Assembly (NCBI GenBank): GCA_044892525.1
Contig: CM097885.1
Span: 186,434,001 to 186,498,000 of the forward strand
Direction: 5' to 3'
Origin: Schmidtea polychroa
Taxonomy: Eukaryota
Length of the DNA stretch: 64,000 nt
This document shows, one piece after another, positions 12,946-64,000 of this stretch. A model generated the notes under the pieces. The model made no database searches, was not told the origin of the DNA, and saw nothing but the letters and a program-made list of their open reading frames with translations. Every line of letters begins with the position of its first letter. Position 1 is the first letter of the stretch. The position numbers and the translations under genes are program-made.

Positions 12946-12948
12946 TTT

Positions 12949-12966: not shown

Positions 12967-13084
12967 ACAATTTACGGGGGGAATAAGAATTTTATTTATA
13001 AAAGGCAAACATCTTTTTTGAATCATTGAGTTAAGAAATAGGAGAGTAATAAATTTTAGACCAGACAATAGAAATCAGCAAATA

Positions 13085-19572: not shown

Positions 19573-19593
19573 ACAAATCTAGCGAGTAAATCA

Positions 19594-20988: not shown

Positions 20989-21033
20989 CTGTTAAAACAT
21001 AGAGACGAAGCATCAAAATTAGTAAGATGGGCA

Positions 21034-22359: not shown

Positions 22360-22371
22360 ACCAATTTAGTC

Positions 22372-23499: not shown

Positions 23500-23762
23500 A
23501 TGTTTAGATTAAACATGCGGGATATTCGTTATTGGGAAAATATTTACGAAACCGAGGTATAGGGGGAAAGTCTCACCATATACTAGGAAGTGTAAATATA
23601 TATAGTTATTTATTTTATATGTTATTTATATTAGTATGTAGACTATTGTGGGCTCCAATGAGCATCTGTAAAATCAGACATCAGCGTATGTCGACTTTGG
23701 TTACCCTGCGAGGGTCTATCACGAAAGGGATAAAAGCTGTTAATTATTTTATTTTTAGAAAA

Positions 23763-24944: not shown

Positions 24945-24951
24945 ACAGGAA

Positions 24952-25824: not shown

Positions 25825-26052
25825 TCCAAGAGCGTTGCCACCCAACATGTGTCGCCGAATTCAAAATGTGTATAAAATGACTTAACTATTATTTGATTTG
25901 TGCTATTCAGTGTTTTGACATTTATTATTTGTGATCTGAAACATTCATTTTATGTTTTGTCTTATTTGATTAATTTTTATGTTTTTATTGTAATGCTGTT
26001 TACCAAAAGCCTTTCTTTAGTCTTGTTTTTTCTTGTTTTCGAGACGAAAATC

Positions 26053-26069
26053 TTTTAGGGGGTAAGACT
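26053..26069 (+). promoter_or_regulatory. Polypurine tract
   Basis: ttttagggggtaagact lies immediately before the TG of the 3' LTR at 26070. Confidence 0.65.
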
Positions 26070-26255
26070 TGTTAGGGATAGGCCTGGAGCCTTGTTGATA
26101 AAATAAATAAAAATTACTAAAATTAGAAATAGTATAAATAAAAATTACTGAAAATAAAAGATAGGTTTAATTAATTACTATTAATAGAATTAAGTAGTAT
26201 ATAGTAATATTTGATATTACTGTTACTATATATATTAATTATAAAATTGCTATTA

Positions 26256-27487
26256 CAGGGTTATTCATTATTATAAATACTTTTATGCAAAATTATAAAT
26301 ACTTTTATTCATTATTATAAATACTTTTTGTTTGAACCGCATGTCGCGCAAAATTAGAAAACCATTGACTTTGGATGGGTATAATTTCATAATAAGGCTT
26401 TCCAATGATGTTTCAATGACACTGAAAAATATATCGGAAATTACAGGATATTCCATAACAACAATAAGAAGAGCTATTGATGATCATCGCCAACAACGAG
26501 TATTTGTTAGCTCGGGCACAAAATTAAGGAACAAAATTAAAGAAAGAAATGCGGTTTTTACTACAGAAGAGTTGGTGATTCATAATTTAGTTTCATGCAA
26601 TAATCTTTTGACGCAATCAGAAATTTCAGAATCAGTACAGATTAGTACAAATAAAAAATTGTCGCAGTCAACAGTCTGCAGGAAATTAAAAAAATGCAAT
26701 ATAACGAGAAAAAGAGTTTCTTTAATTCCTGAGGAAAGAAATAACCAGGATAAAATTGACGCACGATCGATTTATGCCTCTGAAATTTCTAGGTTTGAGC
26801 CTGAATCATTAATTTTCCTGGATGAAACAGGACAACACAACACGCACATACGGATATTCAATTAAAAACTCCCAGTGTTATACAAACGTTAGAGCGAATA
26901 AGGGAGTGAACAATAGTGTAATGTGTGCTATTTCTGTAAGAGGCCTTGTCGAGTACGAAATAATTACAGGGGCATATAATTCAATTAGGTTTATTGAATT
27001 TATTGAGACAAAATTGGTTCCTTACTTTGCTGCGCACTCAAATTCTATTTTGATCATGGATAATTGTCGTTTTCATCATTCGCGTGAGGTTGCAAATGTT
27101 TTTTCTCGCAATAACATATCTTATAAATTCTTACCTGCATATTCGCCGCAGCTTAATCCAATTGAAGAATTTTTTTCTATGTTAAAATCAAGATTTCATA
27201 GGGATAAAATTGATCAACCAACTTCTACCATCAGAGAAAGATTGGCCAGAATATTTTGGATGGACTTTTCCGAGCCCTGTAATGGATTTTATATAAACAT
27301 GCGACGTTGGATAGAAAAAGCCAGGGCCAGAGAACAGTTTTTATAAATGTTAATTAAATTTCAAGTTTCAAAAGTGCTTTTTTATTTTGAATAAAAGTAT
27401 TTATAATAATGAATAAAAGTATTTATAATTTTGCATAAAAGTATTTATAATTTTGCATAAAAGTATTTATAATAATGAATAACCCTG
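26256..27487 (+). mobile_element. Tc1/IS630-family DNA transposon
   Basis: TA duplication at 26254-26255 and 27488-27489; the empty site gctat-TA-atata is visible in the 5' LTR. TIRs start CAGGGTTATTCATT and end AATGAATAACCCTG. Confidence 0.95.
26332..27346 (+). pseudogene. DD34E transposase with one frameshift
   Basis: HTH region, FLDETG, IMDNCRFHHS and FLPAYSPQLNPIEEFFS, with 34 residues between D and E. Frameshift near 26830-26860. Confidence 0.9.
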
Positions 27488-28480: not shown

Positions 28481-28977
28481 ACACCCATGGGATCGATCCT
28501 ATAATGTGCACATTTATTTCGAAATGTTTCTCGGTAGTTTTCGGACCTCTTTCGGATTCGCTTTCGAATTCATTTGTACTTTCGATCAGCACGCTTTAAA
28601 CGCCGATGAAATCGTATTCAGGCGAGAAGCGAATAATAAATATTAAAAATAAAAATATTAAATAAATATTAAAAAAATATATAGTGTGGGTATCTTAGGA
28701 AATACATCTTGTATATTTGATTTTTTTATTAATTAATTAAATTTTAAATATAAATATGAATAAAAAATTATTGGAACGGAGTGTGGTTGGCGAACTGGGA
28801 ACTACCGCCACCAGTCTTTCGTACACCCATGGGATCGATCCTATAATGTGCACATTTATTTCGAAATGTTTCTCGGTAGTTTTCGGACCTCTTTCGGATT
28901 CGCTTTCGAATTCATTTGTACTTTCGATCAGCACGCTTTAAACACCGATGAAATCGTATTCAGGCGAGAAGCGAATA
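28481..28977. repeat. 155-bp direct repeat pair (28481-28635 and 28823-28977)
   Basis: acacccatgggatcgatcc...gagaagcgaata occurs twice with one mismatch. Confidence 0.9.
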
Positions 28978-29514
28978 GTAAGGCGTGCTGCTATTATTGA
29001 ATTGATTCTGATGTATGAGTCTGGTCAGCTTGTATATTGGAAGAGATTCGATAAACGAAAGAGGTCAAAAATGATAAATAAAAAAATGATCCGGATCAAA
29101 AAAACTGTTGAGAGGACAGTGGAAAAAAAACAAATACCACTGTCCTCTCAAAGCAGTTTTACTGTTTCATAAATTTCTTTTTATTCTTTAAATTACAAGA
29201 CTTCAAGATTACAAATAAAGAAAATAATTAATTATTAATTTCATTAATAAATATTTACACAATAACAACTTATTTTTTAGTATATATAGCAGAAATATTG
29301 TCAATACCAATGGGTTCAAAACGCATTTCGGTCACTTTTTTCAAATTTTTTAACGGTATATTGATCAGCATTCTCGATTTAGTACGTGTACAAATTTTTA
29401 AGGTAATTAGTCAACGACATCCCTTAGAAATTTTTATATTTTTCAATTTTTCTTTTATTGGTAAAACTTGTTTTACCAATAAAAGTTATATTTTTATATG
29501 TTAAAGTCTAGTAG

Positions 29515-32800: not shown

Positions 32801-32854
32801 AATTCTAAAATTTGTATTCCAAATAAATATAAAGAAGAAAGATTGTTCTTAATA

Positions 32855-33051
32855 TCAGAGTGTTTCAAGACAAATCAGTACGAAGTTTGATTAATGAAGT
32901 TTATAATTCAGAGTGTTTTAAGATAAATCAGTACGAAGGTTGATTAACGAAGTTTATAATTCAGAGTGTTTTAAGATAAATCAGTACGAAGGTTGATTAA
33001 CGAAGTTTATAATTCAGAGTGATTCAAGACAAACCCATACGAAGGTTGATT
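32855..33051. repeat. 53-bp minisatellite, about 3.7 copies
   Basis: tcagagtg... units start at 32855, 32908, 32961 and 33014. Confidence 0.85.
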
Positions 33052-33428: not shown

Positions 33429-33730
33429 TTCTTATTGCTGTACGACCAATTTCTGAGACTGAGGATTGGCTCTCTTGGACAGCCTCGACAAATTATTGCA
33501 CATCACGATTAGTAAGCAAAATGTAAATTAGTAATTATTGGAAAATTTTAATTAACAATTTTAATCGAGAACTAATTACATTAATACATTACGCAAGATT
33601 GTGGATAGATCTGTTACAAAATTATTAAATCTTATTATTATAAGAATTTGTCTTAAAATAATAACAAAAACCAATGGACTATAACCATAACCATAAAGGC
33701 CAAATTCGTTGCGATAAACAGAATTTATTA

Positions 33731-34969
33731 CAGGGTTATGCAAATCCTTATTTATACTAATCAATATACCTTTTTAATTAAAAGTTTTGAAAAAAATAAC
33801 AATAAGGGTCGCAAAGCAAGGACAACACTCAACAATGAACTTAGAGATCGTGTAATAAATTCTTCCAAAAAACCAAATTCTACTATTAAGGATCTTTCAG
33901 AAACCTTTCAACTGGATAGAAAGACAGTTAGAAAGATCCTAAGAGACGAAGAGAATAAAGTCGAGTTTGTACCGGGCGCTGAGAAGTGTAGGAAGACCTG
34001 TCGTCAAAGGTCACCGACTCTAAATCCAGAAGAGAAGGGAATACTCAACATTATAAGCTGCAACAACTCACTTATACAGGATGAGGTAAAAACCCTCTTG
34101 AGCAACGAATTCGGAATAAATACGACGCAATCAAAGGTTTCTAGAAAGTTGAAGAATCTTAAGCTAACCAGAAAAAGATTGACCCGTATTCCGATTGAGA
34201 GGAACACTGATAATCGCCTAGATGAGAGAGCAATATATGCATCTGAAATTTTAATGATAGGTGATGAAAACCTGGTATTTCTTGACGAAACGGGCTTCAA
34301 TCTGCACACAAGTAGGGCATACGGGTATTCTCCTATAAACACAAAAGCTTTTATCTAAGTTCCTGCTAACAGAAATGTGAATAGAAGTTCAATTTGTGTG
34401 ATTGGTATAAATGGTATAGTTGCCTATCAATATCGAACTGGTTCATATAACCAATTTCTATTTATCGAGTTTATATGTGAACATCTAATTCCCTACTTTC
34501 GACAAAACCCAGGCAAATTTCTGGTAATGGACAATGCAAAGTCTCATTCAAGAGATGTCCAGATTTTATGGTCCGAAAATCGAATTCCCGTTAAATTTCT
34601 AATATCTTACTCACCAGAGCTCAACCCAACTGAAGAGTTTTTTTCGATGTTAAAATCACGATATCATGGATTGAAAGCTGCCAACGCAAACATAAGGATA
34701 GAAGATGCTTTAGATGAGTTACTGGGAACTGATATATCTTATGGAGTAGAATATCGTGGTTTTTACTCTAATATGAGGGTATGGGTTGAAAAGGCAAGAC
34801 GAAGGGACCAATTTATATAATAAATGATCCTTTGAAATATATTTATGACGTTTTTAATTTTTTATCTCTCAACCCTCATATTTATATATTTTTATTAAAT
34901 GGGCATATAGATTTGCATAAATGGGGATATAGATTTGTATAAATGAGTATATAGATTTGCATAACCCTG
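33731..34969 (+). mobile_element. Second Tc1/IS630-family transposon
   Basis: TA flanks at 33729-33730 and 34970-34971. TIRs are CAGGGTTATGCAAATC and GATTTGCATAACCCTG. Confidence 0.9.
33738..34820 (+). pseudogene. Tc1-like transposase with one in-frame stop
   Basis: FLDETGFNLHTSRAYGYS, VMDNAKSH and YSPELNPTEEFFSMLK. ORFs 33738 and 34377 share a frame, with TAA at 34356. Confidence 0.9.
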
Positions 34970-40734: not shown

Positions 40735-40890
40735 NNNNNNNNNNNNNNNNNNNNNNNNNNNNNNNNNNNNNNNNNNNNNNNNNNNNNNNNNNNNNNNNNN
40801 NNNNNNNNNNNNNNNNNNNNNNNNNNNNNNNNNNNNNNNNNNNNNNNNNNNNNNNNNNNNNNNNNNNNNNNNNNNNNNNNNNNNNNNNNT
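40735..40890. other. Assembly gap (156 N)
   Basis: Run of N. Confidence 1.
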
Positions 40891-44172: not shown

Positions 44173-44930
44173 CCCTTTTAGTGTGTTCCCCGACTATACT
44201 TGTCAACAGTACTGCAAGTCTCCTACACAGCGTGAACCCAGACTAGATTCGACCAAAGCAAAAAATACATTGAATATATAGTATATTGTTATTGATTGTT
44301 ATATATTGAAATATTTATTAAAAATGACATCAAGAAAATGCGGATTATCTGCACAACAAATACATTATTTCTTAGATGAGACTGACATTTTTTTATTGAC
44401 AGTGATGAAGATGCCAGTAGTGACAGTAGTAGCGGCGTGGATAGTGATGACATGGTGGTGGTAGTAATGAAACGCTTTATTATGTAAGTGACGACGATTT
44501 GATATGGTCTCTTACAGCGTGCGCGTCTGACTTTCACTGGAGCTCCTGGGTTAAAAAATGTCGTCGCTGATAAAGATGATCCATTGCAATATTTTGAACT
44601 TTTATTTACTCATGACATGATTGATAGCATTGTCACAGAAACCAACAGACGAGGATTACAACTGAGCTCTCAAACAAATCTAAAAACCCGGTCTAGGATG
44701 CGTCAATGGAGAGAAGTCGATGACGCTGAAATCCGTGTTTTCATAGTTATTTGGTTATACCAAGGAATAGAGCAGAAACCGGAAAATTAAATGTTCAGTA
44801 CTACAAAGCCATTGCTGGAAACACCATACACACGGAAAATAATGTCCGAGCTGCGATTCGACTTGATACTCAAATGTTTACATATTGTTGACAATTACAC
44901 TCTTGTTAGATCTGATTCACCAGCTGAGAA
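44173..44930 (+). mobile_element. piggyBac 5' fragment (left end plus transposase N-terminus)
   Basis: TTAA-CCCTTTT end at 44169-44179, then FTGAPG, PLQYFELLF..IVTETN, WREVDDAEIRVF..QGI..P, TP..RKIMS..RF..ILKCLH..DN. Confidence 0.75.
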
Positions 44931-49522: not shown

Positions 49523-50198
49523 TTAAAAGTGTTACCTTAAAAACTAAAAAATAACGTAATTGAATTATATACTTTGCATTTTTGGAATAAAATTTATGAA
49601 TACATTTGTTGGGCTAAACTTCGAGAGTGTCGAAAATCGGGCTAAGAACGAATAAATAGGATAAAACAAATTTTCAATAAAATCACGAGAAATATAAAAA
49701 TAACTAAAGCAGATAACAATAAAAGAAATAAGAATATAAAAGAAATAAAAATAACTAATAAAACAATAGAATGCATGAGGCGAAATAAGGTGAAATTACC
49801 CAACACACATGGTAGGAAAAGGAAAAAACATAAAATAACAAAAAACGTAAGAAATAAACGAGAAATTTAAGAAAATAAAATAGAAATCCTCAAATAAATG
49901 TATAGGCGAATTAAAACAAAAATTGTATTACGATAAAATGACAATAAACGCGCAGGAAAAACGGGAGGAAAATAATAAAAAAAAAGAAGGAGATAAAAAC
50001 CTTGAAAAGAGAAATAAGACACTTGACAGACAAGGTCCAGGAGAAAGATAGACAACTAGAAATGTTGCCGGAACTCCGACATAGAGTCATTAAAGCGGAG
50101 TCTAAATTAATGCGAATCCGGGAGAAAAACCCTAAAAAGAAACGACAAAATTAAAACCGACAAAAAGCGATGTATATAAATGTGTATAAAATTACTAA

Positions 50199-50873
50199 AT
50201 GTATATCAGTAGTATGAAAAACAAACCGATCATAATAATTCTGATGATGGCAATAATCCTTGATCTGACAAGGCGACAACCCGTAAAGCCCGAAATTGAA
50301 CATATTCGAGACAGCAGAAAATCCCACCAAAAGACCGAACCAACAGCCAAATCATGCATCTATCCAAGTATCATAAAAACCCGTCTTACCGACAATATTC
50401 GAGCCACCCGAACGTACGTCAACAATATCAGATTAATGTGTAATAACCACCCCATGTGCAAAATCATTGATAAAAGAATCCTGGACCAAATTCACCAACT
50501 CGATCAGCTAGAACAACAGGTCCAACATCAAGAAATACAAAACCCAGTCGAACCAGTAGAAATCGCCAAAGAAATAAATGACCACCATGAACTCCTCTAC
50601 GTGGTAATCGTCGAAACCACCGTAATCATGGTAATCATCCTCCTAAAAATCCATAATATCTACCAAGTTTGGAAGAAAAGTCACCCCGTACCGGAAAGAT
50701 CGTCTCGAAGATCCCAAGAAGCTAATATGGCTGACGTAATCCAAGAAAATCTCCGACAACGAACCTCCATCGCAGAAACAGTCAGACCGTCCACAAGTCG
50801 CCGAATATACTACAACATCGAAACCCAACAACCAAATCACCCATCATCAACGGCAACTGAACAACAAACATAA
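50199..50873 (+). CDS. Array ORF, full-length 224 aa putative type I membrane protein (unit 1)
   Basis: Hydrophobic N-terminus (PIIIILMMAIIL), Q/E-rich helical ectodomain, TM LLYVVIVETTVIMVIILL and an S/T/R-rich tail. TATA-like tatataaa lies just upstream. Expression is unproven. Confidence 0.5.
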   Translation: MYISSMKNKPIIIILMMAIILDLTRRQPVKPEIEHIRDSRKSHQKTEPTAKSCIYPSIIKTRLTDNIRATRTYVNNIRLMCNNHPMCKIIDKRILDQIHQLDQLEQQVQHQEIQNPVEPVEIAKEINDHHELLYVVIVETTVIMVIILLKIHNIYQVWKKSHPVPERSSRRSQEANMADVIQENLRQRTSIAETVRPSTSRRIYYNIETQQPNHPSSTATEQQT

Positions 50874-51724
50874 CATTTCGAACTATAACTATTGACAAAA
50901 TTTTCACTGTTTTATTATCTTCTGATGAAACCGGTCACCTTAAGTGGCCACTGCTTGCTTATATTTGTCATTTTCTCTGTTTAATTAAAGTATTTTTTTG
51001 TTGTTAATTTGATTTTATGTTTGTGTAGATTTTGATTGAGAAATTATGGGTTATACCGAAAGAAGGTATGATTCAAATGTATGATATTATGTGAATTGCG
51101 GGACGCAATTTTAACGGGCCCCGGAGTGATTTGTTGGGCTAAACTTCGAGAGTGTCGAAAATCGGGCTAAGAACGAATAAATAGGATAAAAAAAATTTTC
51201 AATAAAATCACGAGAAATATAAAAATAACTAAAGCAGATAACAATAAAAGAAATAAGAATATAAAAGAAATAAAAATAACTAATAAAACAATAGAATGCA
51301 TAAGGCGAAATAAGGTGAAATTACCCAACACACATGGTAGGAAAAGGAAAAAACATAAAATAACAAAAAACGTAAGAAATAAACGAGAAATTTAAGAAAA
51401 TAAAATAGAAATCCTCAAATAAATGTATAGGCGAATTAAAACAAAAATTGTATTACGATAAAATGACAATAAACGCGCAGGAAAAACGGGAGGAAAATAA
51501 TAAAAAAAAAAGAAGGAGATAAAAACCTTGAAAAGAGAAATAAGACACTTGACAGACAAGGTCCAGGAGAAAGATAGACAACTAGAAATGTTGCCGGAAC
51601 TCCGACATAGAGTCATTAAAGCGGAGTCTAAATTAATGCGAATCCGGGAGAAAAACCCTAAAAAGAAACGACAAAATTAAAACCGACAAAAAGCGATGTA
51701 TATAAATGTGTATAAAATTACTAA

Positions 51725-52399
51725 ATGTATATCAGTAGTATGAAAAACAAACCGATCATAATAATTCTGATGATGGCAATAATCCTTGATCTGACAAGGC
51801 GACAACCCGTAAAGCCCGAAATTGAACATATTCGAGACAGCAGAAAATCCCACCAAAAGACCGAACCAACAGCCAAATCATGCATCTATCCAAGTATCAT
51901 AAAAACCCGTCTTACCGACAATATTCGAGCCACCCGAACGTACGTCAACAATATCAGATTAATGTGTAATAACCACCCCATGTGCAAAATCATTGATAAA
52001 AGAATCCTGGACCAAATTCACCAACTCGATCAGCTAGAACAACAGGTCCAACATCAAGAAATACAAAACCCAGTCGAACCAGTAGAAATCGCCAAAGAAA
52101 TAAATGACCACCATGAACTCCTCTACGTGGTAATCGTCGAAACCACCGTAATCATGGTAATCATCCTCCTAAAAATCCATAATATCTACCAAGTTTGGAA
52201 GAAAAGTCACCCCGTACCGGAAAGATCGTCTCGAAGATCCCAAGAAGCTAATATGGCTGACGTAATCCAAGAAAATCTCCGACAACGAACCTCCATCGCA
52301 GAAACAGTCAGACCGTCCACAAGTCGCCGAATATACTACAACATCGAAACCCAACAACCAAATCACCCATCATCAACGGCAACTGAACAACAAACATAA
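51725..52399 (+). CDS. Array ORF, full length (unit 2, allele A)
   Basis: Identical 224 aa protein; CAA at 52241. Confidence 0.5.
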   Translation: MYISSMKNKPIIIILMMAIILDLTRRQPVKPEIEHIRDSRKSHQKTEPTAKSCIYPSIIKTRLTDNIRATRTYVNNIRLMCNNHPMCKIIDKRILDQIHQLDQLEQQVQHQEIQNPVEPVEIAKEINDHHELLYVVIVETTVIMVIILLKIHNIYQVWKKSHPVPERSSRRSQEANMADVIQENLRQRTSIAETVRPSTSRRIYYNIETQQPNHPSSTATEQQT

Positions 52400-53248
52400 C
52401 ATTTCGAACTATAACTATTGACAAAATTTTCACTGTTTTATTATCTTCTGATGAAACCGGTCACCTTAAGTGGCCACTGCTTGCTTATATTTGTCATTTT
52501 CTCTGTTTAATTAAAGTATTTTTTGTTGTTAATTTGATTTTATGTTTGTGTAGATTTTGATTGAGAAATTATGGGTTATACCGAAAGAAGGTATGATCCA
52601 AATGTATGATATTATGTGAATTGCGGGACGCAATTTTAACGGGCCCCGGAGTGATTTGTTGGGCTAAACTTCGAGAGTGTCGAAAATCGGGCTAAGAACG
52701 AATAAATAGGATAAAACAAATTTTCAATAAAATCACGAGAAATATAAAAATAACTAAAGCAGATAACAATAAAAGAAATAAGAATATAAAAGAAATAAAA
52801 ATAACTAATAAAACAATAGAATGCATAAGGCGAAATAAGGTGAAATTACCCAACACACATGGTAGGAAAAGGAAAAAACATAAAATAACAAAAAACGTAA
52901 GAAATAAACGAGAAATTTAAGAAAATAAAATAGAAATCCTCAAATAAATGTATAGGCGAATTAAAACAAAAATTGTATTACGATAAAATGACAATAAACG
53001 CGCAGGAAAAACGGGAGGAAAATAATAAAAAAAAAGAAGGAGATAAAAACCTTGAAAAGAGAATTAAGACACTTGACAGACAAGGTCCAGGAGAAAGATA
53101 GACAACTAGAAATGTTGCCGGAACTCCGACATAGAGTCATTAAAGCGGAGTCTAAATTAATGCGAATCCGGGAGAAAAACCCTAAAAAGAAACGACAAAA
53201 TTAAAACCGACAAAAAGCGATGTATATAAATGTGTATAAAATTACTAA

Positions 53249-53767
53249 ATGTATATCAGTAGTATGAAAAACAAACCGATCATAATAATTCTGATGATGG
53301 CAATAATCCTTGATCTGACAAGGCGACAACCCGTAAAGCCCGAAATTGAACATATTCGAGACAGCAGAAAATCCCACCAAAAGACCGAACCAACAGCCAA
53401 ATCATGCATCTATCCAAGTATCATAAAAACCCGTCTTACCGACAATATTCGAGCCACCCGAACGTACGTCAACAATATCAGATTAATGTGTAATAACCAC
53501 CCCATGTGCAAAATCATTGATAAAAGAATCCTGGACCAAATTCACCAACTCGATCAGCTAGAACAACAGGTCCAACATCAAGAAATACAAAACCCAGTCG
53601 AACCAGTAGAAATCGCCAAAGAAATAAATGACCACCATGAACTCCTCTACGTGGTAATCGTCGAAACCACCGTAATCATGGTAATCATCCTCCTAAAAAT
53701 CCATAATATCTACCAAGTTTGGAAGAAAAGTCACCCCGTACCGGAAAGATCGTCTCGAAGATCCTAA
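53249..53767 (+). CDS. Array ORF, tail-truncated 172 aa (unit 3, allele B)
   Basis: CAA>TAA at 53765. Confidence 0.45.
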   Translation: MYISSMKNKPIIIILMMAIILDLTRRQPVKPEIEHIRDSRKSHQKTEPTAKSCIYPSIIKTRLTDNIRATRTYVNNIRLMCNNHPMCKIIDKRILDQIHQLDQLEQQVQHQEIQNPVEPVEIAKEINDHHELLYVVIVETTVIMVIILLKIHNIYQVWKKSHPVPERSSRRS

Positions 53768-54772
53768 GAAGCTAATATGGCTGACGTAATCCAAGAAAAT
53801 CTCCGACAACGAACCTCCATCGCAGAAACAGTCAGACCGTCCACAAGTCGCCGAATATACTACAACATCGAAACCCAACAACCAAATCACCCATCATCAA
53901 CGGCAACTGAACAACAAACATAACATTTCGAACTATAACTATTGACAAAATTTTCACTGTTTTATTATCTTCTGATGAAACCGGTCACCTTAAGTGGCCA
54001 CTGCTTGCTTATATTTGTCATTTTCTCTGTTTAATTAAAGTATTTTTTGTTGTTAATTTGATTTTATGTTTGTGTAGATTTTGATTGAGAAATTATAGGT
54101 TATACCGAAAGAAGGTATGATCCAAATGTATGATATTATGTGAATTGCGGGACGCAATTTTAACGGGCCCCGGAGTGATTTGTTGGGCTAAACTTCGAGA
54201 GTGTCGAAAATCGGGCTAAGAACGAATAAATAGGATAAAACAAATTTTCAATAAAATCACGAGAAATATAAAAATAACTAAAGCAGATAACAATAAAAGA
54301 AATAAGAATATAAAAGAAATAAAAATAACTAATAAAACAATAGAATGCATAAGGCGAAATAAGGTGAAATTACCCAACACACATGGTAGGAAAAGGAAAA
54401 AACATAAAATAACAAAAAACGTAAGAAATAAACGAGAAATTTAAGAAAATAAAATAGAAATCCTCAAATAAATGTATAGGCGAATTAAAACAAAAATTGT
54501 ATTACGATAAAATGACAATAAACGCGCAGGAAAAACGGGAGGAAAATAATAAAAAAAAAGAAGGAGATAAAAACCTTGAAAAGAGAAATAAGACACTTGA
54601 CAGACAAGGTCCAGGAGAAAGATAGACAACTAGAAATGTTGCCGGAACTCCGACATAGAGTCATTAAAGCGGAGTCTAAATTAATGCGAATCCGGGAGAA
54701 AAACCCTAAAAAGAAACGACAAAATTAAAACCGACAAAAAGCGATGTATATAAATGTGTATAAAATTACTAA

Positions 54773-55447
54773 ATGTATATCAGTAGTATGAAAAACAAAC
54801 CGATCATAATAATTCTGATGATGGCAATAATCCTTGATCTGACAAGGCGACAACCCGTAAAGCCCGAAATTGAACATATTCGAGACAGCAGAAAATCCCA
54901 CCAAAAGACCGAACCAACAGCCAAATCATGCATCTATCCAAGTATCATAAAAACCCGTCTTACCGACAATATTCGAGCCACCCGAACGTACGTCAACAAT
55001 ATCAGATTAATGTGTAATAACCACCCCATGTGCAAAATCATTGATAAAAGAATCCTGGACCAAATTCACCAACTCGATCAGCTAGAACAACAGGTCCAAC
55101 ATCAAGAAATACAAAACCCAGTCGAACCAGTAGAAATCGCCAAAGAAATAAATGACCACCATGAACTCCTCTACGTGGTAATCGTCGAAACCACCGTAAT
55201 CATGGTAATCATCCTCCTAAAAATCCATAATATCTACCAAGTTTGGAAGAAAAGTCACCCCGTACCGGAAAGATCGTCTCGAAGATCCCAAGAAGCTAAT
55301 ATGGCTGACGTAATCCAAGAAAATCTCCGACAACGAACCTCCATCGCAGAAACAGTCAGACCGTCCACAAGTCGCCGAATATACTACAACATCGAAACCC
55401 AACAACCAAATCACCCATCATCAACGGCAACTGAACAACAAACATAA
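54773..55447 (+). CDS. Array ORF, full length (unit 4, allele A)
   Basis: Identical 224 aa protein. Confidence 0.5.
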   Translation: MYISSMKNKPIIIILMMAIILDLTRRQPVKPEIEHIRDSRKSHQKTEPTAKSCIYPSIIKTRLTDNIRATRTYVNNIRLMCNNHPMCKIIDKRILDQIHQLDQLEQQVQHQEIQNPVEPVEIAKEINDHHELLYVVIVETTVIMVIILLKIHNIYQVWKKSHPVPERSSRRSQEANMADVIQENLRQRTSIAETVRPSTSRRIYYNIETQQPNHPSSTATEQQT

Positions 55448-56296
55448 CATTTCGAACTATAACTATTGACAAAATTTTCACTGTTTTATTATCTTCTGAT
55501 GAAACCGGTCACCTTAAGTGGCCACTGCTTGCTTATATTTGTCATTTTCTCTGTTTAATTAAAGTATTTTTTGTTGTTAATTTGATTTTATGTTTGTGTA
55601 GATTTTGATTGAGAAATTATGGGTTATACCGAAAGAAGGTATGATCCAAATGTATGATATTATGTGAATTGCGGGACGCAATTTTAACGGGCCCCGGAGT
55701 GATTTGTTGGGCTAAACTTCGAGAGTGTCGAAAATCGGGCTAAGAACGAATAAATAGGATAAAACAAATTTTCAATAAAATCACGAGAAATATAAAAATA
55801 ACTAAAGCAGATAACAATAAAAGAAATAAGAATATAAAAGAAATAAAAATAACTAATAAAACAATAGAATGCATAAGGCGAAATAAGGTGAAATTACCCA
55901 ACACACATGGTAGGAAAAGGAAAAAACATAAAATAACAAAAAACGTAAGAAATAAACGAGAAATTTAAGAAAATAAAATAGAAATCCTCAAATAAATGTA
56001 TAGGCGAATTAAAACAAAAATTGTATTACGATAAAATGACAATAAACGCGCAGGAAAAACGGGAGGAAAATAATAAAAAAAAAGAAGGAGATAAAAACCT
56101 TGAAAAGAGAATTAAGACACTTGACAGACAAGGTCCAGGAGAAAGATAGACAACTAGAAATGTTGCCGGAACTCCGACATAGAGTCATTAAAGCGGAGTC
56201 TAAATTAATGCGAATCCGGGAGAAAAACCCTAAAAAGAAACGACAAAATTAAAACCGACAAAAAGCGATGTATATAAATGTGTATAAAATTACTAA

Positions 56297-56815
56297 ATGT
56301 ATATCAGTAGTATGAAAAACAAACCGATCATAATAATTCTGATGATGGCAATAATCCTTGATCTGACAAGGCGACAACCCGTAAAGCCCGAAATTGAACA
56401 TATTCGAGACAGCAGAAAATCCCACCAAAAGACCGAACCAACAGCCAAATCATGCATCTATCCAAGTATCATAAAAACCCGTCTTACCGACAATATTCGA
56501 GCCACCCGAACGTACGTCAACAATATCAGATTAATGTGTAATAACCACCCCATGTGCAAAATCATTGATAAAAGAATCCTGGACCAAATTCACCAACTCG
56601 ATCAGCTAGAACAACAGGTCCAACATCAAGAAATACAAAACCCAGTCGAACCAGTAGAAATCGCCAAAGAAATAAATGACCACCATGAACTCCTCTACGT
56701 GGTAATCGTCGAAACCACCGTAATCATGGTAATCATCCTCCTAAAAATCCATAATATCTACCAAGTTTGGAAGAAAAGTCACCCCGTACCGGAAAGATCG
56801 TCTCGAAGATCCTAA
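56297..56815 (+). CDS. Array ORF, truncated (unit 5, allele B)
   Basis: Same TAA as unit 3. Confidence 0.45.
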   Translation: MYISSMKNKPIIIILMMAIILDLTRRQPVKPEIEHIRDSRKSHQKTEPTAKSCIYPSIIKTRLTDNIRATRTYVNNIRLMCNNHPMCKIIDKRILDQIHQLDQLEQQVQHQEIQNPVEPVEIAKEINDHHELLYVVIVETTVIMVIILLKIHNIYQVWKKSHPVPERSSRRS

Positions 56816-57820
56816 GAAGCTAATATGGCTGACGTAATCCAAGAAAATCTCCGACAACGAACCTCCATCGCAGAAACAGTCAGACCGTCCACAAGTCGCC
56901 GAATATACTACAACATCGAAACCCAACAACCAAATCACCCATCATCAACGGCAACTGAACAACAAACATAACATTTCGAACTATAACTATTGACAAAATT
57001 TTCACTGTTTTATTATCTTCTGATGAAACCGGTCACCTTAAGTGGCCACTGCTTGCTTATATTTGTCATTTTCTCTGTTTAATTAAAGTATTTTTTGTTG
57101 TTAATTTGATTTTATGTTTGTGTAGATTTTGATTGAGAAATTATAGGTTATACCGAAAGAAGGTATGATCCAAATGTATGATATTATGTGAATTGCGGGA
57201 CGCAATTTTAACGGGCCCCGGAGTGATTTGTTGGGCTAAACTTCGAGAGTGTCGAAAATCGGGCTAAGAACGAATAAATAGGATAAAACAAATTTTCAAT
57301 AAAATCACGAGAAATATAAAAATAACTAAAGCAGATAACAATAAAAGAAATAAGAATATAAAAGAAATAAAAATAACTAATAAAACAATAGAATGCATAA
57401 GGCGAAATAAGGTGAAATTACCCAACACACATGGTAGGAAAAGGAAAAAACATAAAATAACAAAAAACGTAAGAAATAAACGAGAAATTTAAGAAAATAA
57501 AATAGAAATCCTCAAATAAATGTATAGGCGAATTAAAACAAAAATTGTATTACGATAAAATGACAATAAACGCGCAGGAAAAACGGGAGGAAAATAATAA
57601 AAAAAAAGAAGGAGATAAAAACCTTGAAAAGAGAAATAAGACACTTGACAGACAAGGTCCAGGAGAAAGATAGACAACTAGAAATGTTGCCGGAACTCCG
57701 ACATAGAGTCATTAAAGCGGAGTCTAAATTAATGCGAATCCGGGAGAAAAACCCTAAAAAGAAACGACAAAATTAAAACCGACAAAAAGCGATGTATATA
57801 AATGTGTATAAAATTACTAA

Positions 57821-58495
57821 ATGTATATCAGTAGTATGAAAAACAAACCGATCATAATAATTCTGATGATGGCAATAATCCTTGATCTGACAAGGCGACA
57901 ACCCGTAAAGCCCGAAATTGAACATATTCGAGACAGCAGAAAATCCCACCAAAAGACCGAACCAACAGCCAAATCATGCATCTATCCAAGTATCATAAAA
58001 ACCCGTCTTACCGACAATATTCGAGCCACCCGAACGTACGTCAACAATATCAGATTAATGTGTAATAACCACCCCATGTGCAAAATCATTGATAAAAGAA
58101 TCCTGGACCAAATTCACCAACTCGATCAGCTAGAACAACAGGTCCAACATCAAGAAATACAAAACCCAGTCGAACCAGTAGAAATCGCCAAAGAAATAAA
58201 TGACCACCATGAACTCCTCTACGTGGTAATCGTCGAAACCACCGTAATCATGGTAATCATCCTCCTAAAAATCCATAATATCTACCAAGTTTGGAAGAAA
58301 AGTCACCCCGTACCGGAAAGATCGTCTCGAAGATCCCAAGAAGCTAATATGGCTGACGTAATCCAAGAAAATCTCCGACAACGAACCTCCATCGCAGAAA
58401 CAGTCAGACCGTCCACAAGTCGCCGAATATACTACAACATCGAAACCCAACAACCAAATCACCCATCATCAACGGCAACTGAACAACAAACATAA
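57821..58495 (+). CDS. Array ORF, full length (unit 6, allele A)
   Basis: Identical 224 aa protein. Confidence 0.5.
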   Translation: MYISSMKNKPIIIILMMAIILDLTRRQPVKPEIEHIRDSRKSHQKTEPTAKSCIYPSIIKTRLTDNIRATRTYVNNIRLMCNNHPMCKIIDKRILDQIHQLDQLEQQVQHQEIQNPVEPVEIAKEINDHHELLYVVIVETTVIMVIILLKIHNIYQVWKKSHPVPERSSRRSQEANMADVIQENLRQRTSIAETVRPSTSRRIYYNIETQQPNHPSSTATEQQT

Positions 58496-59344
58496 CATTT
58501 CGAACTATAACTATTGACAAAATTTTCACTGTTTTATTATCTTCTGATGAAACCGGTCACCTTAAGTGGCCACTGCTTGCTTATATTTGTCATTTTCTCT
58601 GTTTAATTAAAGTATTTTTTGTTGTTAATTTGATTTTATGTTTGTGTAGATTTTGATTGAGAAATTATGGGTTATACCGAAAGAAGGTATGATCCAAATG
58701 TATGATATTATGTGAATTGCGGGACGCAATTTTAACGGGCCCCGGAGTGATTTGTTGGGCTAAACTTCGAGAGTGTCGAAAATCGGGCTAAGAACGAATA
58801 AATAGGATAAAACAAATTTTCAATAAAATCACGAGAAATATAAAAATAACTAAAGCAGATAACAATAAAAGAAATAAGAATATAAAAGAAATAAAAATAA
58901 CTAATAAAACAATAGAATGCATAAGGCGAAATAAGGTGAAATTACCCAACACACATGGTAGGAAAAGGAAAAAACATAAAATAACAAAAAACGTAAGAAA
59001 TAAACGAGAAATTTAAGAAAATAAAATAGAAATCCTCAAATAAATGTATAGGCGAATTAAAACAAAAATTGTATTACGATAAAATGACAATAAACGCGCA
59101 GGAAAAACGGGAGGAAAATAATAAAAAAAAAGAAGGAGATAAAAACCTTGAAAAGAGAATTAAGACACTTGACAGACAAGGTCCAGGAGAAAGATAGACA
59201 ACTAGAAATGTTGCCGGAACTCCGACATAGAGTCATTAAAGCGGAGTCTAAATTAATGCGAATCCGGGAGAAAAACCCTAAAAAGAAACGACAAAATTAA
59301 AACCGACAAAAAGCGATGTATATAAATGTGTATAAAATTACTAA

Positions 59345-59863
59345 ATGTATATCAGTAGTATGAAAAACAAACCGATCATAATAATTCTGATGATGGCAAT
59401 AATCCTTGATCTGACAAGGCGACAACCCGTAAAGCCCGAAATTGAACATATTCGAGACAGCAGAAAATCCCACCAAAAGACCGAACCAACAGCCAAATCA
59501 TGCATCTATCCAAGTATCATAAAAACCCGTCTTACCGACAATATTCGAGCCACCCGAACGTACGTCAACAATATCAGATTAATGTGTAATAACCACCCCA
59601 TGTGCAAAATCATTGATAAAAGAATCCTGGACCAAATTCACCAACTCGATCAGCTAGAACAACAGGTCCAACATCAAGAAATACAAAACCCAGTCGAACC
59701 AGTAGAAATCGCCAAAGAAATAAATGACCACCATGAACTCCTCTACGTGGTAATCGTCGAAACCACCGTAATCATGGTAATCATCCTCCTAAAAATCCAT
59801 AATATCTACCAAGTTTGGAAGAAAAGTCACCCCGTACCGGAAAGATCGTCTCGAAGATCCTAA
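59345..59863 (+). CDS. Array ORF, truncated (unit 7, allele B)
   Basis: Same TAA as unit 3. Confidence 0.45.
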   Translation: MYISSMKNKPIIIILMMAIILDLTRRQPVKPEIEHIRDSRKSHQKTEPTAKSCIYPSIIKTRLTDNIRATRTYVNNIRLMCNNHPMCKIIDKRILDQIHQLDQLEQQVQHQEIQNPVEPVEIAKEINDHHELLYVVIVETTVIMVIILLKIHNIYQVWKKSHPVPERSSRRS

Positions 59864-60868
59864 GAAGCTAATATGGCTGACGTAATCCAAGAAAATCTCC
59901 GACAACGAACCTCCATCGCAGAAACAGTCAGACCGTCCACAAGTCGCCGAATATACTACAACATCGAAACCCAACAACCAAATCACCCATCATCAACGGC
60001 AACTGAACAACAAACATAACATTTCGAACTATAACTATTGACAAAATTTTCACTGTTTTATTATCTTCTGATGAAACCGGTCACCTTAAGTGGCCACTGC
60101 TTGCTTATATTTGTCATTTTCTCTGTTTAATTAAAGTATTTTTTGTTGTTAATTTGATTTTATGTTTGTGTAGATTTTGATTGAGAAATTATAGGTTATA
60201 CCGAAAGAAGGTATGATCCAAATGTATGATATTATGTGAATTGCGGGACGCAATTTTAACGGGCCCCGGAGTGATTTGTTGGGCTAAACTTCGAGAGTGT
60301 CGAAAATCGGGCTAAGAACGAATAAATAGGATAAAACAAATTTTCAATAAAATCACGAGAAATATAAAAATAACTAAAGCAGATAACAATAAAAGAAATA
60401 AGAATATAAAAGAAATAAAAATAACTAATAAAACAATAGAATGCATAAGGCGAAATAAGGTGAAATTACCCAACACACATGGTAGGAAAAGGAAAAAACA
60501 TAAAATAACAAAAAACGTAAGAAATAAACGAGAAATTTAAGAAAATAAAATAGAAATCCTCAAATAAATGTATAGGCGAATTAAAACAAAAATTGTATTA
60601 CGATAAAATGACAATAAACGCGCAGGAAAAACGGGAGGAAAATAATAAAAAAAAAGAAGGAGATAAAAACCTTGAAAAGAGAAATAAGACACTTGACAGA
60701 CAAGGTCCAGGAGAAAGATAGACAACTAGAAATGTTGCCGGAACTCCGACATAGAGTCATTAAAGCGGAGTCTAAATTAATGCGAATCCGGGAGAAAAAC
60801 CCTAAAAAGAAACGACAAAATTAAAACCGACAAAAAGCGATGTATATAAATGTGTATAAAATTACTAA

Positions 60869-61543
60869 ATGTATATCAGTAGTATGAAAAACAAACCGAT
60901 CATAATAATTCTGATGATGGCAATAATCCTTGATCTGACAAGGCGACAACCCGTAAAGCCCGAAATTGAACATATTCGAGACAGCAGAAAATCCCACCAA
61001 AAGACCGAACCAACAGCCAAATCATGCATCTATCCAAGTATCATAAAAACCCGTCTTACCGACAATATTCGAGCCACCCGAACGTACGTCAACAATATCA
61101 GATTAATGTGTAATAACCACCCCATGTGCAAAATCATTGATAAAAGAATCCTGGACCAAATTCACCAACTCGATCAGCTAGAACAACAGGTCCAACATCA
61201 AGAAATACAAAACCCAGTCGAACCAGTAGAAATCGCCAAAGAAATAAATGACCACCATGAACTCCTCTACGTGGTAATCGTCGAAACCACCGTAATCATG
61301 GTAATCATCCTCCTAAAAATCCATAATATCTACCAAGTTTGGAAGAAAAGTCACCCCGTACCGGAAAGATCGTCTCGAAGATCCCAAGAAGCTAATATGG
61401 CTGACGTAATCCAAGAAAATCTCCGACAACGAACCTCCATCGCAGAAACAGTCAGACCGTCCACAAGTCGCCGAATATACTACAACATCGAAACCCAACA
61501 ACCAAATCACCCATCATCAACGGCAACTGAACAACAAACATAA
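60869..61543 (+). CDS. Array ORF, full length (unit 8, allele A)
   Basis: Identical 224 aa protein. Confidence 0.5.
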   Translation: MYISSMKNKPIIIILMMAIILDLTRRQPVKPEIEHIRDSRKSHQKTEPTAKSCIYPSIIKTRLTDNIRATRTYVNNIRLMCNNHPMCKIIDKRILDQIHQLDQLEQQVQHQEIQNPVEPVEIAKEINDHHELLYVVIVETTVIMVIILLKIHNIYQVWKKSHPVPERSSRRSQEANMADVIQENLRQRTSIAETVRPSTSRRIYYNIETQQPNHPSSTATEQQT

Positions 61544-62392
61544 CATTTCGAACTATAACTATTGACAAAATTTTCACTGTTTTATTATCTTCTGATGAAA
61601 CCGGTCACCTTAAGTGGCCACTGCTTGCTTATATTTGTCATTTTCTCTGTTTAATTAAAGTATTTTTTGTTGTTAATTTGATTTTATGTTTGTGTAGATT
61701 TTGATTGAGAAATTATGGGTTATACCGAAAGAAGGTATGATCCAAATGTATGATATTATGTGAATTGCGGGACGCAATTTTAACGGGCCCCGGAGTGATT
61801 TGTTGGGCTAAACTTCGAGAGTGTCGAAAATCGGGCTAAGAACGAATAAATAGGATAAAACAAATTTTCAATAAAATCACGAGAAATATAAAAATAACTA
61901 AAGCAGATAACAATAAAAGAAATAAGAATATAAAAGAAATAAAAATAACTAATAAAACAATAGAATGCATAAGGCGAAATAAGGTGAAATTACCCAACAC
62001 ACATGGTAGGAAAAGGAAAAAACATAAAATAACAAAAAACGTAAGAAATAAACGAGAAATTTAAGAAAATAAAATAGAAATCCTCAAATAAATGTATAGG
62101 CGAATTAAAACAAAAATTGTATTACGATAAAATGACAATAAACGCGCAGGAAAAACGGGAGGAAAATAATAAAAAAAAAGAAGGAGATAAAAACCTTGAA
62201 AAGAGAATTAAGACACTTGACAGACAAGGTCCAGGAGAAAGATAGACAACTAGAAATGTTGCCGGAACTCCGACATAGAGTCATTAAAGCGGAGTCTAAA
62301 TTAATGCGAATCCGGGAGAAAAACCCTAAAAAGAAACGACAAAATTAAAACCGACAAAAAGCGATGTATATAAATGTGTATAAAATTACTAA

Positions 62393-62911
62393 ATGTATAT
62401 CAGTAGTATGAAAAACAAACCGATCATAATAATTCTGATGATGGCAATAATCCTTGATCTGACAAGGCGACAACCCGTAAAGCCCGAAATTGAACATATT
62501 CGAGACAGCAGAAAATCCCACCAAAAGACCGAACCAACAGCCAAATCATGCATCTATCCAAGTATCATAAAAACCCGTCTTACCGACAATATTCGAGCCA
62601 CCCGAACGTACGTCAACAATATCAGATTAATGTGTAATAACCACCCCATGTGCAAAATCATTGATAAAAGAATCCTGGACCAAATTCACCAACTCGATCA
62701 GCTAGAACAACAGGTCCAACATCAAGAAATACAAAACCCAGTCGAACCAGTAGAAATCGCCAAAGAAATAAATGACCACCATGAACTCCTCTACGTGGTA
62801 ATCGTCGAAACCACCGTAATCATGGTAATCATCCTCCTAAAAATCCATAATATCTACCAAGTTTGGAAGAAAAGTCACCCCGTACCGGAAAGATCGTCTC
62901 GAAGATCCTAA
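62393..62911 (+). CDS. Array ORF, truncated (unit 9, allele B)
   Basis: Same TAA as unit 3. Confidence 0.45.
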   Translation: MYISSMKNKPIIIILMMAIILDLTRRQPVKPEIEHIRDSRKSHQKTEPTAKSCIYPSIIKTRLTDNIRATRTYVNNIRLMCNNHPMCKIIDKRILDQIHQLDQLEQQVQHQEIQNPVEPVEIAKEINDHHELLYVVIVETTVIMVIILLKIHNIYQVWKKSHPVPERSSRRS

Positions 62912-64000
62912 GAAGCTAATATGGCTGACGTAATCCAAGAAAATCTCCGACAACGAACCTCCATCGCAGAAACAGTCAGACCGTCCACAAGTCGCCGAAT
63001 ATACTACAACATCGAAACCCAACAACCAAATCACCCATCATCAACGGCAACTGAACAACAAACATAACATTTCGAACTATAACTATTGACAAAATTTTCA
63101 CTGTTTTATTATCTTCTGATGAAACCGGTCACCTTAAGTGGCCACTGCTTGCTTATATTTGTCATTTTCTCTGTTTAATTAAAGTATTTTTTGTTGTTAA
63201 TTTGATTTTATGTTTGTGTAGATTTTGATTGAGAAATTATAGGTTATACCGAAAGAAGGTATGATCCAAATGTATGATATTATGTGAATTGCGGGACGCA
63301 ATTTTAACGGGCCCCGGAGTGATTTGTTGGGCTAAACTTCGAGAGTGTCGAAAATCGGGCTAAGAACGAATAAATAGGATAAAACAAATTTTCAATAAAA
63401 TCACGAGAAATATAAAAATAACTAAAGCAGATAACAATAAAAGAAATAAGAATATAAAAGAAATAAAAATAACTAATAAAACAATAGAATGCATAAGGCG
63501 AAATAAGGTGAAATTACCCAACACACATGGTAGGAAAAGGAAAAAACATAAAATAACAAAAAACGTAAGAAATAAACGAGAAATTTAAGAAAATAAAATA
63601 GAAATCCTCAAATAAATGTATAGGCGAATTAAAACAAAAATTGTATTACGATAAAATGACAATAAACGCGCAGGAAAAACGGGAGGAAAATAATAAAAAA
63701 AAAGAAGGAGATAAAAACCTTGAAAAGAGAAATAAGACACTTGACAGACAAGGTCCAGGAGAAAGATAGACAACTAGAAATGTTGCCGGAACTCCGACAT
63801 AGAGTCATTAAAGCGGAGTCTAAATTAATGCGAATCCGGGAGAAAAACCCTAAAAAGAAACGACAAAATTAAAACCGACAAAAAGCGATGTATATAAATG
63901 TGTATAAAATTACTAAATGTATATCAGTAGTATGAAAAACAAACCGATCATAATAATTCTGATGATGGCAATAATCCTTGATCTGACAAGGCGACAACCC

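What the first reader, a model, noticed from the sequence alone, without database searches (positions are those of the whole stretch)
51132..64000. Strict A/B alternation: full-length and tail-less alleles in a 3048-bp higher-order repeat
Seen: three linked variants alternate perfectly from unit 2 onward. These are gagaaata/gagaatta upstream of the ORF, CAA/TAA at codon 173, and attatggg/attatagg downstream. B units stop about 20 residues after the TM helix and lose the 52-aa tail that includes the YY motif. Inference: amplification acted on a dimer (rolling circle or unequal crossover). If both are expressed, the array gives a fixed 1:1 ratio of signalling-competent and decoy forms. Neutral hitch-hiking of a nonsense allele is the simpler explanation.
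Basis: partly seen in the sequence, partly recalled or inferred. Interest (0 to 1): 0.7.

Follow-up and report, generated by a model that had tools for sequence, protein, structure and literature searches.

The report
Two-unit repeat array carrying orphan ORF
A 1.5-kb DNA unit carrying an orphan open reading frame is repeated head-to-tail at least 9.4 times, and its inner copies were amplified two at a time, so an intact copy and a copy with a stop codon alternate; this is the ordinary signature of a higher-order tandem repeat, not evidence of a designed 1:1 protein pair.

Summary
It has 10 units (the last is cut) of 1524-1526 bp. Only eight columns vary. Five are private to the two edge units. 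The other three (A/T, C/T = CAA/TAA at codon 173, G/A) are perfectly linked and alternate A A B A B A B A B A. From 52654 to 64000 the sequence has an exact 3048-bp period with no mismatch.

Amplification or homogenisation therefore acted on an A+B dimer, well after A and B had diverged. The edge units carry the A states, so the stop codon is the derived state.

The 224-codon ORF is longer than chance and has the layout of a single-pass membrane protein. It has no relative in 1.84 billion representative proteins, no Pfam family, no fold match and no other copy in the window.

Nothing supports a signalling/decoy system. The tail has one YxxI match and no ITAM or ITIM. One nonsense change among three substitutions is expected by chance about 6% of the time.

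The best reading is a young ORF-bearing macrosatellite in a transposon-rich region of an invertebrate genome, with a hitch-hiking nonsense allele. An assembly artefact cannot be excluded without reads.

The parts
49604..64000 (+). Whole tandem array within the window: 10 units (last one cut by the window end). The right end was not seen.
   Evidence: The left flank has no similarity to the unit.
49604..51128 (+). Edge unit u1 (1525 bp), A-type, with 3 private variants: G at 49777, an extra T at 50993 and T at 51073.
51129..52653 (+). Edge unit u2 (1525 bp), A-type, with 2 private variants: A at 51192 and an extra A at 51502.
52654..55701 (+). Higher-order repeat copy 1 (3048 bp): B unit 52654-54177 plus A unit 54178-55701.
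55702..58749 (+). Higher-order repeat copy 2, identical to copy 1.
   Evidence: 0 mismatches
58750..61797 (+). Higher-order repeat copy 3, identical to copy 1.
   Evidence: 0 mismatches
61798..64000 (+). Higher-order repeat copy 4, cut by the window end. It is identical to copy 1 over its 2203 bp.
54773..55447 (+). A-type ORF of 224 aa, ending in its own TAA. It has a hydrophobic N-terminus (about residues 9-25), an ectodomain-like part with C-x5-C, a hydrophobic helix at about 131-151, and a 73-aa tail. Identical ORFs lie at 50199-50873, 51725-52399, 57821-58495 and 60869-61543.
53249..53767 (+). B-type ORF of 172 aa, ended by TAA in place of CAA at codon 173. Identical ORFs lie at 56297-56815, 59345-59863 and 62393-62911.
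53064..53064 (+). Alternating site 1, 185 bp upstream of the ATG. It is T in B units (53064, 56112, 59160, 62208) and A in A units (50014, 51540, 54588, 57636, 60684, 63732).
53765..53765 (+). Alternating site 2, the first base of codon 173. It is T (TAA) in B units (53765, 56813, 59861, 62909) and C (CAA) in A units (50715, 52241, 55289, 58337, 61385).
54097..54097 (+). Alternating site 3, 175 bp downstream of the A-type stop. It is A in B units (54097, 57145, 60193, 63241) and G in A units (51048, 52573, 55621, 58669, 61717).

Best explanation
This is a genuine, very young macrosatellite-type tandem array in a transposon-rich region of an invertebrate animal genome. Each 1524-bp unit carries one intronless orphan ORF for a small, predicted single-pass membrane protein.

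Proposed history:
1. A 1.5-kb unit was duplicated in tandem.
2. One copy picked up three substitutions. One of them turned Gln-173 (CAA) into a stop (TAA).
3. That copy and its intact neighbour were then amplified or homogenised together, in two-unit register. Unequal sister-chromatid exchange or replication slippage could do this. Rolling-circle copying of an excised dimer is possible but indistinguishable here.
4. The result is a 3048-bp higher-order repeat whose copies are still identical. The two units at the left edge escaped homogenisation and kept private variants.

The nonsense allele is a passenger of this process, not a selected 'decoy'.

Shown: the anatomy, the phase, the identity of the dimers, the derived state of the stop, and the orphan status of the ORF. 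Inferred: the mechanism of amplification, neutrality, and that the ORF is or recently was coding.
For: - Spacing and unit alignment show 8 variable columns. Three are perfectly linked and alternate; five are private to u1 or u2.
- Three full dimers and one partial dimer have 0 mismatches over 11,347 bp. A and B differ by 3/1524, so A/B divergence clearly predates the dimer amplification.
- Diverged edge units next to a homogeneous interior, and HOR copies more alike than their monomers, are the textbook pattern of concerted evolution of satellites (PMC8122249, read).
- Both edge units carry the A states, so the TAA is derived.
- Chance easily allows one nonsense change. 4.4% of single-base changes in the ORF are nonsense, and P(at least 1 of 3 substitutions in the unit) = 0.058.
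- The ORF is not random. Its 224 codons exceed all 2000 shuffles of the unit (maximum 219, mean 91). Base composition differs by codon position (chi-square 38.4, 6 df) while the flanks give 8.6 and 3.0. The ORF has a hydrophobic N-terminus plus one strong helix.
- Context is repeat-rich: a Ty3/gypsy-type LTR element, Tc1/mariner pieces and a piggyBac fragment. The nearest named reverse-transcriptase relatives come from spiders, insects and a rotifer.
Against: - No reads were available, so the copy number, and strictly speaking the alternation itself, rest on the assembly.
- No relative of the ORF exists in any collection searched. Purifying selection could therefore not be tested, and the ORF could be a relic.
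- Part of the codon-position signal is forced by the mere absence of stops.
- Only 1 of 8 variants falls in the ORF, which is 44% of the unit (P = 0.068). This hints weakly at constraint and would fit a functional gene, and so it also weakly fits the rival in which the truncation matters.
- The right end of the array lies outside the window.
Confidence: 0.7

Rival explanations
1. The alternation is an assembly artefact. The A and B copies are two haplotypes, or non-alternating copies of a collapsed repeat, that the assembler threaded alternately through a cycle in its graph. The true array is then all-A on one haplotype, or irregular.
For: Interior units are otherwise 100% identical. That is the situation in which assemblers cannot place copies and may choose arbitrary paths or copy numbers. 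The window holds one N run (40735-40889), so the assembly is not gap-free.
Against: The three sites lie 701 and 333 bp apart and stay in perfect phase in every unit. A 14-kb perfect 1.5-kb array can only be laid out from long reads, which would read the phase directly (inference). Polishing or collapse should give one consensus base in every unit, not alternation (inference). Edge units with private variants and 1525/1526-bp lengths look biological.
Confidence: 0.12
2. The dimer is a selected unit. Both ORFs are expressed, so the array delivers the full-length membrane protein and a tail-less form at a fixed 1:1 gene dosage. The tail-less form would act as a dominant-negative or decoy partner, or as a form that lacks a sorting signal.
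For: The B form keeps the signal-like N-terminus, ectodomain and membrane helix, and loses only the tail with a YxxPhi-like YYNI. The gene is intronless, so a premature stop need not trigger nonsense-mediated decay (inference from general knowledge). Only 1 of 8 variants lies in the ORF (P = 0.068).
Against: There is no evidence of expression. No homologue, family or fold gives the tail a function. The tail has no ITAM (two YxxL/I motifs) and no ITIM ([SIVL]xYxx[IVL]), as read. The stop travels with two linked non-coding changes, as expected for a random haplotype. The chance probability of such a stop is about 0.06. Dimeric higher-order repeats arise without selection in non-coding satellites (PMC8122249).
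Confidence: 0.05
3. The ORF is not a gene at all. The array is a non-coding satellite, possibly the relic of an unrecognisable mobile element, and the 224-codon frame is a leftover or an accident, which would make the CAA/TAA difference meaningless.
For: There were zero relatives at E <= 0.001 among 1.84 billion representatives. No gene with this exact product is on record. The structure model is of low confidence (pLDDT 59.9). The strand is strongly A-rich and the neighbourhood is full of transposons.
Against: The ORF is longer than all 2000 shuffles. The codon-position heterogeneity is absent from the flanks. The membrane-protein layout is orderly. The array structure and the hitch-hiking verdict hold whichever way this goes.
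Confidence: 0.35
4. TAA is read as glutamine in this organism (a variant genetic code), so the A and B ORFs would encode the same protein.
For: CAA and TAA are both Gln in ciliate-type codes. The DNA is AT-rich. An in-frame TAA also interrupts the pol region of the neighbouring element, at 22357-22359.
Against: Re-scanning with reduced stop sets gives no coherent longer genes. The neighbouring element is also broken by a frameshift and an in-frame TGA, so it is decayed rather than recoded. Its relatives are metazoan Ty3/gypsy elements, and no nuclear TAA reassignment is known in animals (own knowledge). The A-type ORF itself ends in TAA.
Confidence: 0.02

Closest known systems
Dimeric higher-order repeats of satellite DNA (for example alpha-satellite dimers in which one of the two monomers carries the CENP-B box; dimeric and trimeric HORs of beetle satellites)
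   Same: Two monomer types alternate strictly because a block of two was amplified and homogenised together. HOR copies are more alike than the monomers inside them. Array edges are less homogenised (PMC8122249).
   Different: The unit here is 1.5 kb and carries an ORF. The monomers differ by only 0.2%, against about 30% in alpha satellite. No centromere role is indicated. Only about 9.4 units are seen.
ORF-bearing macrosatellites and tandem gene arrays (D4Z4 with DUX4, CT47 arrays and other gene-containing large tandem repeats)
   Same: A kilobase-sized unit, each with a complete intronless ORF, repeated head-to-tail with near-identity (PMC2588610; PMC8122249).
   Different: There is no sequence relationship to any of them. 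The ORF is an orphan. The dimeric intact/stop organisation is specific to this array. It lies in an invertebrate rather than a mammalian genome.
Xenopus oocyte-type 5S DNA, whose amplified repeat holds a gene plus a pseudogene (own knowledge, not checked here)
   Same: An intact copy and a defective copy alternate along a tandem array because the amplified block contains both. The defective copy is carried along passively.
   Different: That is an RNA gene with a truncated duplicate inside one unit. Here two full-length units differ by a single nonsense change and two linked non-coding changes.

Membership tests
Higher-order-repeat tandem array (satellite/macrosatellite) | Head-to-tail copies of one unit with constant spacing | tested here: met
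   Spacing is 1525, 1525/1526, then 1524 x7. Self-similarity at lag 1524 runs from 51488 to the window end.
Higher-order-repeat tandem array (satellite/macrosatellite) | Blocks of n monomers are more alike than adjacent monomers | tested here: met
   The 3048-bp blocks have 0 mismatches, while adjacent monomers differ at 3 sites.
Higher-order-repeat tandem array (satellite/macrosatellite) | Edge units less homogenised than interior units | tested here: met
   u1 has 3 private variants and u2 has 2. u3 to u10 have none. Only the left edge is visible.
Protein-coding gene family in tandem | ORF longer than composition allows, with a coding-like signature | tested here: met
   The 224 codons exceed all 2000 shuffles. 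Codon-position chi-square is 38.4, against 8.6 and 3.0 in the flanks. This is partly inflated by the absence of stops.
Protein-coding gene family in tandem | Homologues elsewhere, or evidence of purifying selection | tested here: not met
   No hit in Pfam, the word search, PDB sequences, the exhaustive HMMER search, viral or metagenome loci, or elsewhere in the window. The variant distribution is inconclusive (P = 0.068).
Protein-coding gene family in tandem | Transcription and translation | not testable with these tools
   No expression data are available. TATA-like strings at 50173-50180 and 50185-50191 and a TCAGT at 50206-50210 were seen by eye, but their spacing is ambiguous.
Immune-type signalling receptor with tyrosine motifs (ITAM/ITIM) | ITAM: two YxxL/I motifs 6-12 residues apart. 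ITIM: [SIVL]xYxx[IVL]. | tested here: not met
   The tail sequence has only RRIYYNI. That is one YxxI, with R at position -2, and there is no second YxxL/I. It fits only the loose YxxPhi sorting pattern, which is common by chance.
Class I viral/retroviral fusion subunit (helix, Cys loop, helix, membrane anchor) | Sequence or fold similarity to known TM subunits | tested here: not met
   The model is all-helical, with a C-x5-C between H54-81 and H87-110. No Foldseek hit at E <= 0.001 in PDB or BFVD. No sequence hit. No similarity to the glycoprotein of the neighbouring element.
Helitron-derived (rolling-circle) tandem array | Unit bounded by 5'-TC and 3'-CTRR, with a hairpin just before the 3' end | tested here: not met
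   The phase set by the left boundary starts ATTTGTTGGG and ends CCGGAGTG. A short palindrome (TTGCG-GGA-CGCAA) lies about 30 bp before the junction, but there is no TC or CTRR terminus. The right end is not in the window.
Tandem LTR array | Unit with TG...CA termini, and similarity to the LTRs of an element | tested here: not met
   The unit has no CA end. It has no similarity to the rest of the window, including the LTRs at 11862-12047 and 26070-26255.

The most novel reading that the evidence does not exclude
The array hard-wires stoichiometry. Selection keeps the two-unit block because the cell needs the full-length membrane protein and its tail-less partner in equal gene dosage. This would be a genomic substitute for alternative splicing in an intronless, lineage-restricted gene family.
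Probability: 0.04. Interest if true: 0.65.

Novelty: new member of a known kind. Interest (0 to 1): 0.22.

Why it matters
The value is mostly a clean worked example. The array shows a two-step history, with monomers diverging first and a dimer then sweeping the array. It also shows how a nonsense allele can reach 50% of the copies of a tandem gene family without any selection. For annotation, half the copies of this orphan ORF should be flagged as truncated. The array should also be treated as a copy-number-uncertain region. If the ORF proves to be expressed, it would be a lineage-restricted membrane protein amplified very recently, which could be worth a look in the source species. Nothing here makes an open question newly testable.

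Tried and rejected
- **Variant genetic code (TAA = Gln).** Reduced stop sets give no coherent longer genes, the neighbouring element is frameshifted as well, and the relatives are metazoan. Rejected.
- **Homology of the ORF.** Nothing in Pfam at E up to 10 came near the cut-offs. The word search, PDB sequences, the exhaustive search of 1.84 billion representatives, exact-product look-ups for both forms, viral and metagenome loci and an exact DNA pattern across the C/T site in metagenomes all came back empty.
- **Structure route.** The single-sequence AlphaFold model is weak (pLDDT 59.9), and Foldseek against PDB and BFVD gave nothing at E <= 0.001.
- **Origin from the neighbouring LTR element or other window sequence.** blastn and tblastx of the dimer against 1-49593 found nothing. 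Smith-Waterman of the left flank against the unit scored no better than shuffles.
- **Helitron or LTR termini at the unit boundary.** Absent.
- **RNA genes.** No Rfam family and no tRNA in the window.
- **Second gene in the A-rich half of the unit.** Only short Lys/Asn-rich frames were found.
- **Species identification.** This failed. The best reverse-transcriptase relatives are only 44-52% identical, and the glycoprotein has a single partial relative.
Full report
**1. What is in the sequence**

The repeat finder reports ten in-register copies between 49604 and 64000. Their start-to-start spacing is 1525, 1525 (1526 in another register), then 1524 seven times. Self-comparison at lag 1524 is above 90% from 51488 to the window end, and at lag 3048 likewise. 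TRF did not report the array only because its longest period is 500.

The array therefore begins one unit earlier than the finding's start (51132), and it runs off the window, so its right end and true size are unknown. The left boundary is abrupt. The flank ends ...TTATGAATAC and the unit phase starts ATTTGTTGGGC. The 2 kb to the left has no more similarity to the unit than shuffled sequence does. Nothing else in the window resembles the unit at DNA or translated level.

**2. The variants**

A MAFFT alignment of the ten units (1526 columns) has eight variable columns.
- Three are private to unit 1: G at 49777, an extra T at 50993 and T at 51073.
- Two are private to unit 2: A at 51192 and an extra A at 51502.
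  - A/T, 185 bp upstream of the ATG (GAGAAATA/GAGAATTA).
  - C/T at the first base of codon 173 (CAA/TAA).
  - G/A, 175 bp downstream of the stop (ATTATGGG/ATTATAGG).

All three are perfectly linked. The order for u1 to u10 is A A B A B A B A B A.

The dimers 52654-55701, 55702-58749 and 58750-61797 and the partial 61798-64000 are identical base for base. The B form stops 21 residues after the hydrophobic helix at about 131-151 and loses 52 residues.

**3. History that the anatomy implies**

A and B differ at 3 of 1524 positions. Four successive dimers show no difference over 11.3 kb. If the dimers were as old as the A/B split, about 0.2% divergence would be expected among them, and none is seen. 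So the A/B divergence came first and the spread of the dimer came later and recently.

The two edge units carry the A state at all three sites, so the B states, including the stop, are derived. A homogeneous interior, less homogenised edge units, and higher-order blocks more alike than their monomers are the standard marks of concerted evolution of tandem repeats. The usual causes are unequal exchange, slippage, conversion or rolling-circle copying (PMC8122249, read). Which of these acted cannot be told from one array. No Helitron-like or LTR-like termini mark the unit.

**4. Is the stop codon special?**

Of the 2016 possible single-base changes in the ORF, 89 (4.4%) are nonsense. The chance that at least one of three random substitutions in the unit is a nonsense change in the ORF is 0.058. 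That is unremarkable. The stop also travels with two non-coding changes, as any random haplotype would.

Only one of the eight variants lies in the ORF, which makes up 44% of the unit (P = 0.068; 0.17 if the two homopolymer indels are left out). This is a weak and inconclusive hint of constraint.

**5. What the ORF is**

It is the only sizeable frame in the unit. Several features suggest it is or was coding.
- It is longer than the longest frame in any of 2000 shuffles of the unit (224 codons against a maximum of 219 and a mean of 91).
- Its base composition differs by codon position (chi-square 38.4, 6 df), while the A-rich upstream part (8.6) and the T-rich downstream part (3.0) do not. Part of this signal is forced by the lack of stops.
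- It has a hydrophobic N-terminus, a roughly 105-residue middle part with a C-x5-C and a Gln/Glu-rich helix, one strong hydrophobic helix, and a 73-residue polar tail. The AlphaFold single-sequence model is all-helical but weak (pLDDT 59.9).

It has no relatives anywhere I could look.
- No Pfam family, even at E up to 10, with all hits far below their cut-offs.
- No word-search hit and no PDB sequence hit.
- No hit at E <= 0.001 among 1.84 billion representative proteins read exhaustively.
- No gene on record with either exact product.
- No locus in viral or metagenome contigs.
- No fold match.

It is an orphan. I put the chance that it is an expressed gene at roughly 0.4 to 0.6.

The 'signalling' label has no support. 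The tail has RRIYYNI, which is one YxxI. It has neither the paired motifs of an ITAM nor the [SIVL]xYxx[IVL] of an ITIM. At most it fits the loose YxxPhi sorting pattern.

**6. Genetic-code check**

CAA and TAA are synonymous in ciliate-type codes, so I tested for a variant code. Reduced stop sets do not produce coherent longer genes. The neighbouring retroelement is broken by a frameshift and by in-frame TGA and TAA codons, which means decay rather than recoding. Its reverse transcriptase is nearest to Ty3/gypsy elements of spiders, insects and a rotifer (44-52% identity). The A-type ORF itself ends in TAA. I reject the variant code.

**7. Context**

The window is AT-rich (21-42% G+C) and dominated by mobile elements.
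- A 14.4-kb LTR element at 11862-26255.
- Two Tc1/mariner-type pieces.
- A piggyBac-type fragment.

The window has no Rfam family and no tRNA. The source is an invertebrate animal that I could not name. It is not human.

**8. Artefact question**

By inference, a perfect 1.5-kb array of 14 kb can only be laid out from long reads, and those would carry the phase of sites 333-701 bp apart directly. Collapse or polishing errors would make units uniform, not alternating. The edge units look biological. I leave 0.12 for an artefact of order, and more than that for an error in copy number.

**9. Comparison and verdict**

The array works like a dimeric higher-order repeat and meets the three defining features I could test. 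It resembles ORF-bearing macrosatellites such as D4Z4 and other gene-containing large tandem repeats (PMC2588610; PMC8122249), without any sequence relationship to them. The alternation of an intact and a defective copy recalls the gene-plus-pseudogene repeat of Xenopus oocyte 5S DNA (own knowledge).

It is a new member of a known kind. The 1:1 signalling/decoy idea is not excluded but has nothing in its favour (about 0.04-0.05).

Noticed in passing
window 11862-26255: A 14.4-kb LTR element with 186-nt LTRs that are 99% alike. Its gag has zinc knuckles (13368-14063). Its pol has RT/RNase H (19594-20985) and integrase (21034-22356). It carries a Monjiviricetes-type (negative-strand RNA virus) fusion glycoprotein lying upstream of pol instead of downstream. 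That glycoprotein is split over two frames (16626-17213 and 17228-19138). In-frame stops sit at 20986-20988 and 22357-22359. The glycoprotein had only one partial relative in the word search.
   Followed up: partly
window 22372-24941 and 25249-25821: Three long ORFs (375, 470 and 191 aa) lie inside the LTR element, downstream of the integrase. None has a Pfam family, and what they are remains open.
   Followed up: no
window 26332-27343 and 33657-34817: Two Tc1/mariner-type transposase remnants (DDE_3, with an HTH part that weakly hits Arg_repressor). They are about 7 kb apart on the same strand.
   Followed up: partly
window 44503-44787: A short piggyBac-type transposase fragment (DDE_Tnp_1_7, E = 1e-8).
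   Followed up: no
window 32850-33051: A 53-bp tandem repeat of 3.8 copies with 92% matches, lying just upstream of the second Tc1/mariner piece.
   Followed up: no
window 28481-28639 and 28823-28981: A 159-nt direct repeat, 99% identical, with its copies 342 bp apart.
   Followed up: no
window 8836-11616: Three consecutive plus-strand ORFs lie just before the 5' LTR. One has C2H2 zinc fingers (8836-9426). A 436-aa ORF has only a weak Erv1/Alr hit. A 213-aa ORF has no family. This could be a host gene or another element.
   Followed up: no
window 40735-40889: A run of 155 N (assembly gap or masked). It was left as it is. The 38-40 kb stretch before it is the most G+C-rich part of the window (42%).
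   Followed up: no
window 50173-50216 (and the same place in every unit): TATA-like strings (50173-50180 and 50185-50191) and an arthropod-initiator-like TCAGT (50206-50210) straddle the first ATG (50199). If that initiator is used, translation would have to start at Met-6 (50214), with a very short leader. This was seen by eye only.
   Followed up: no
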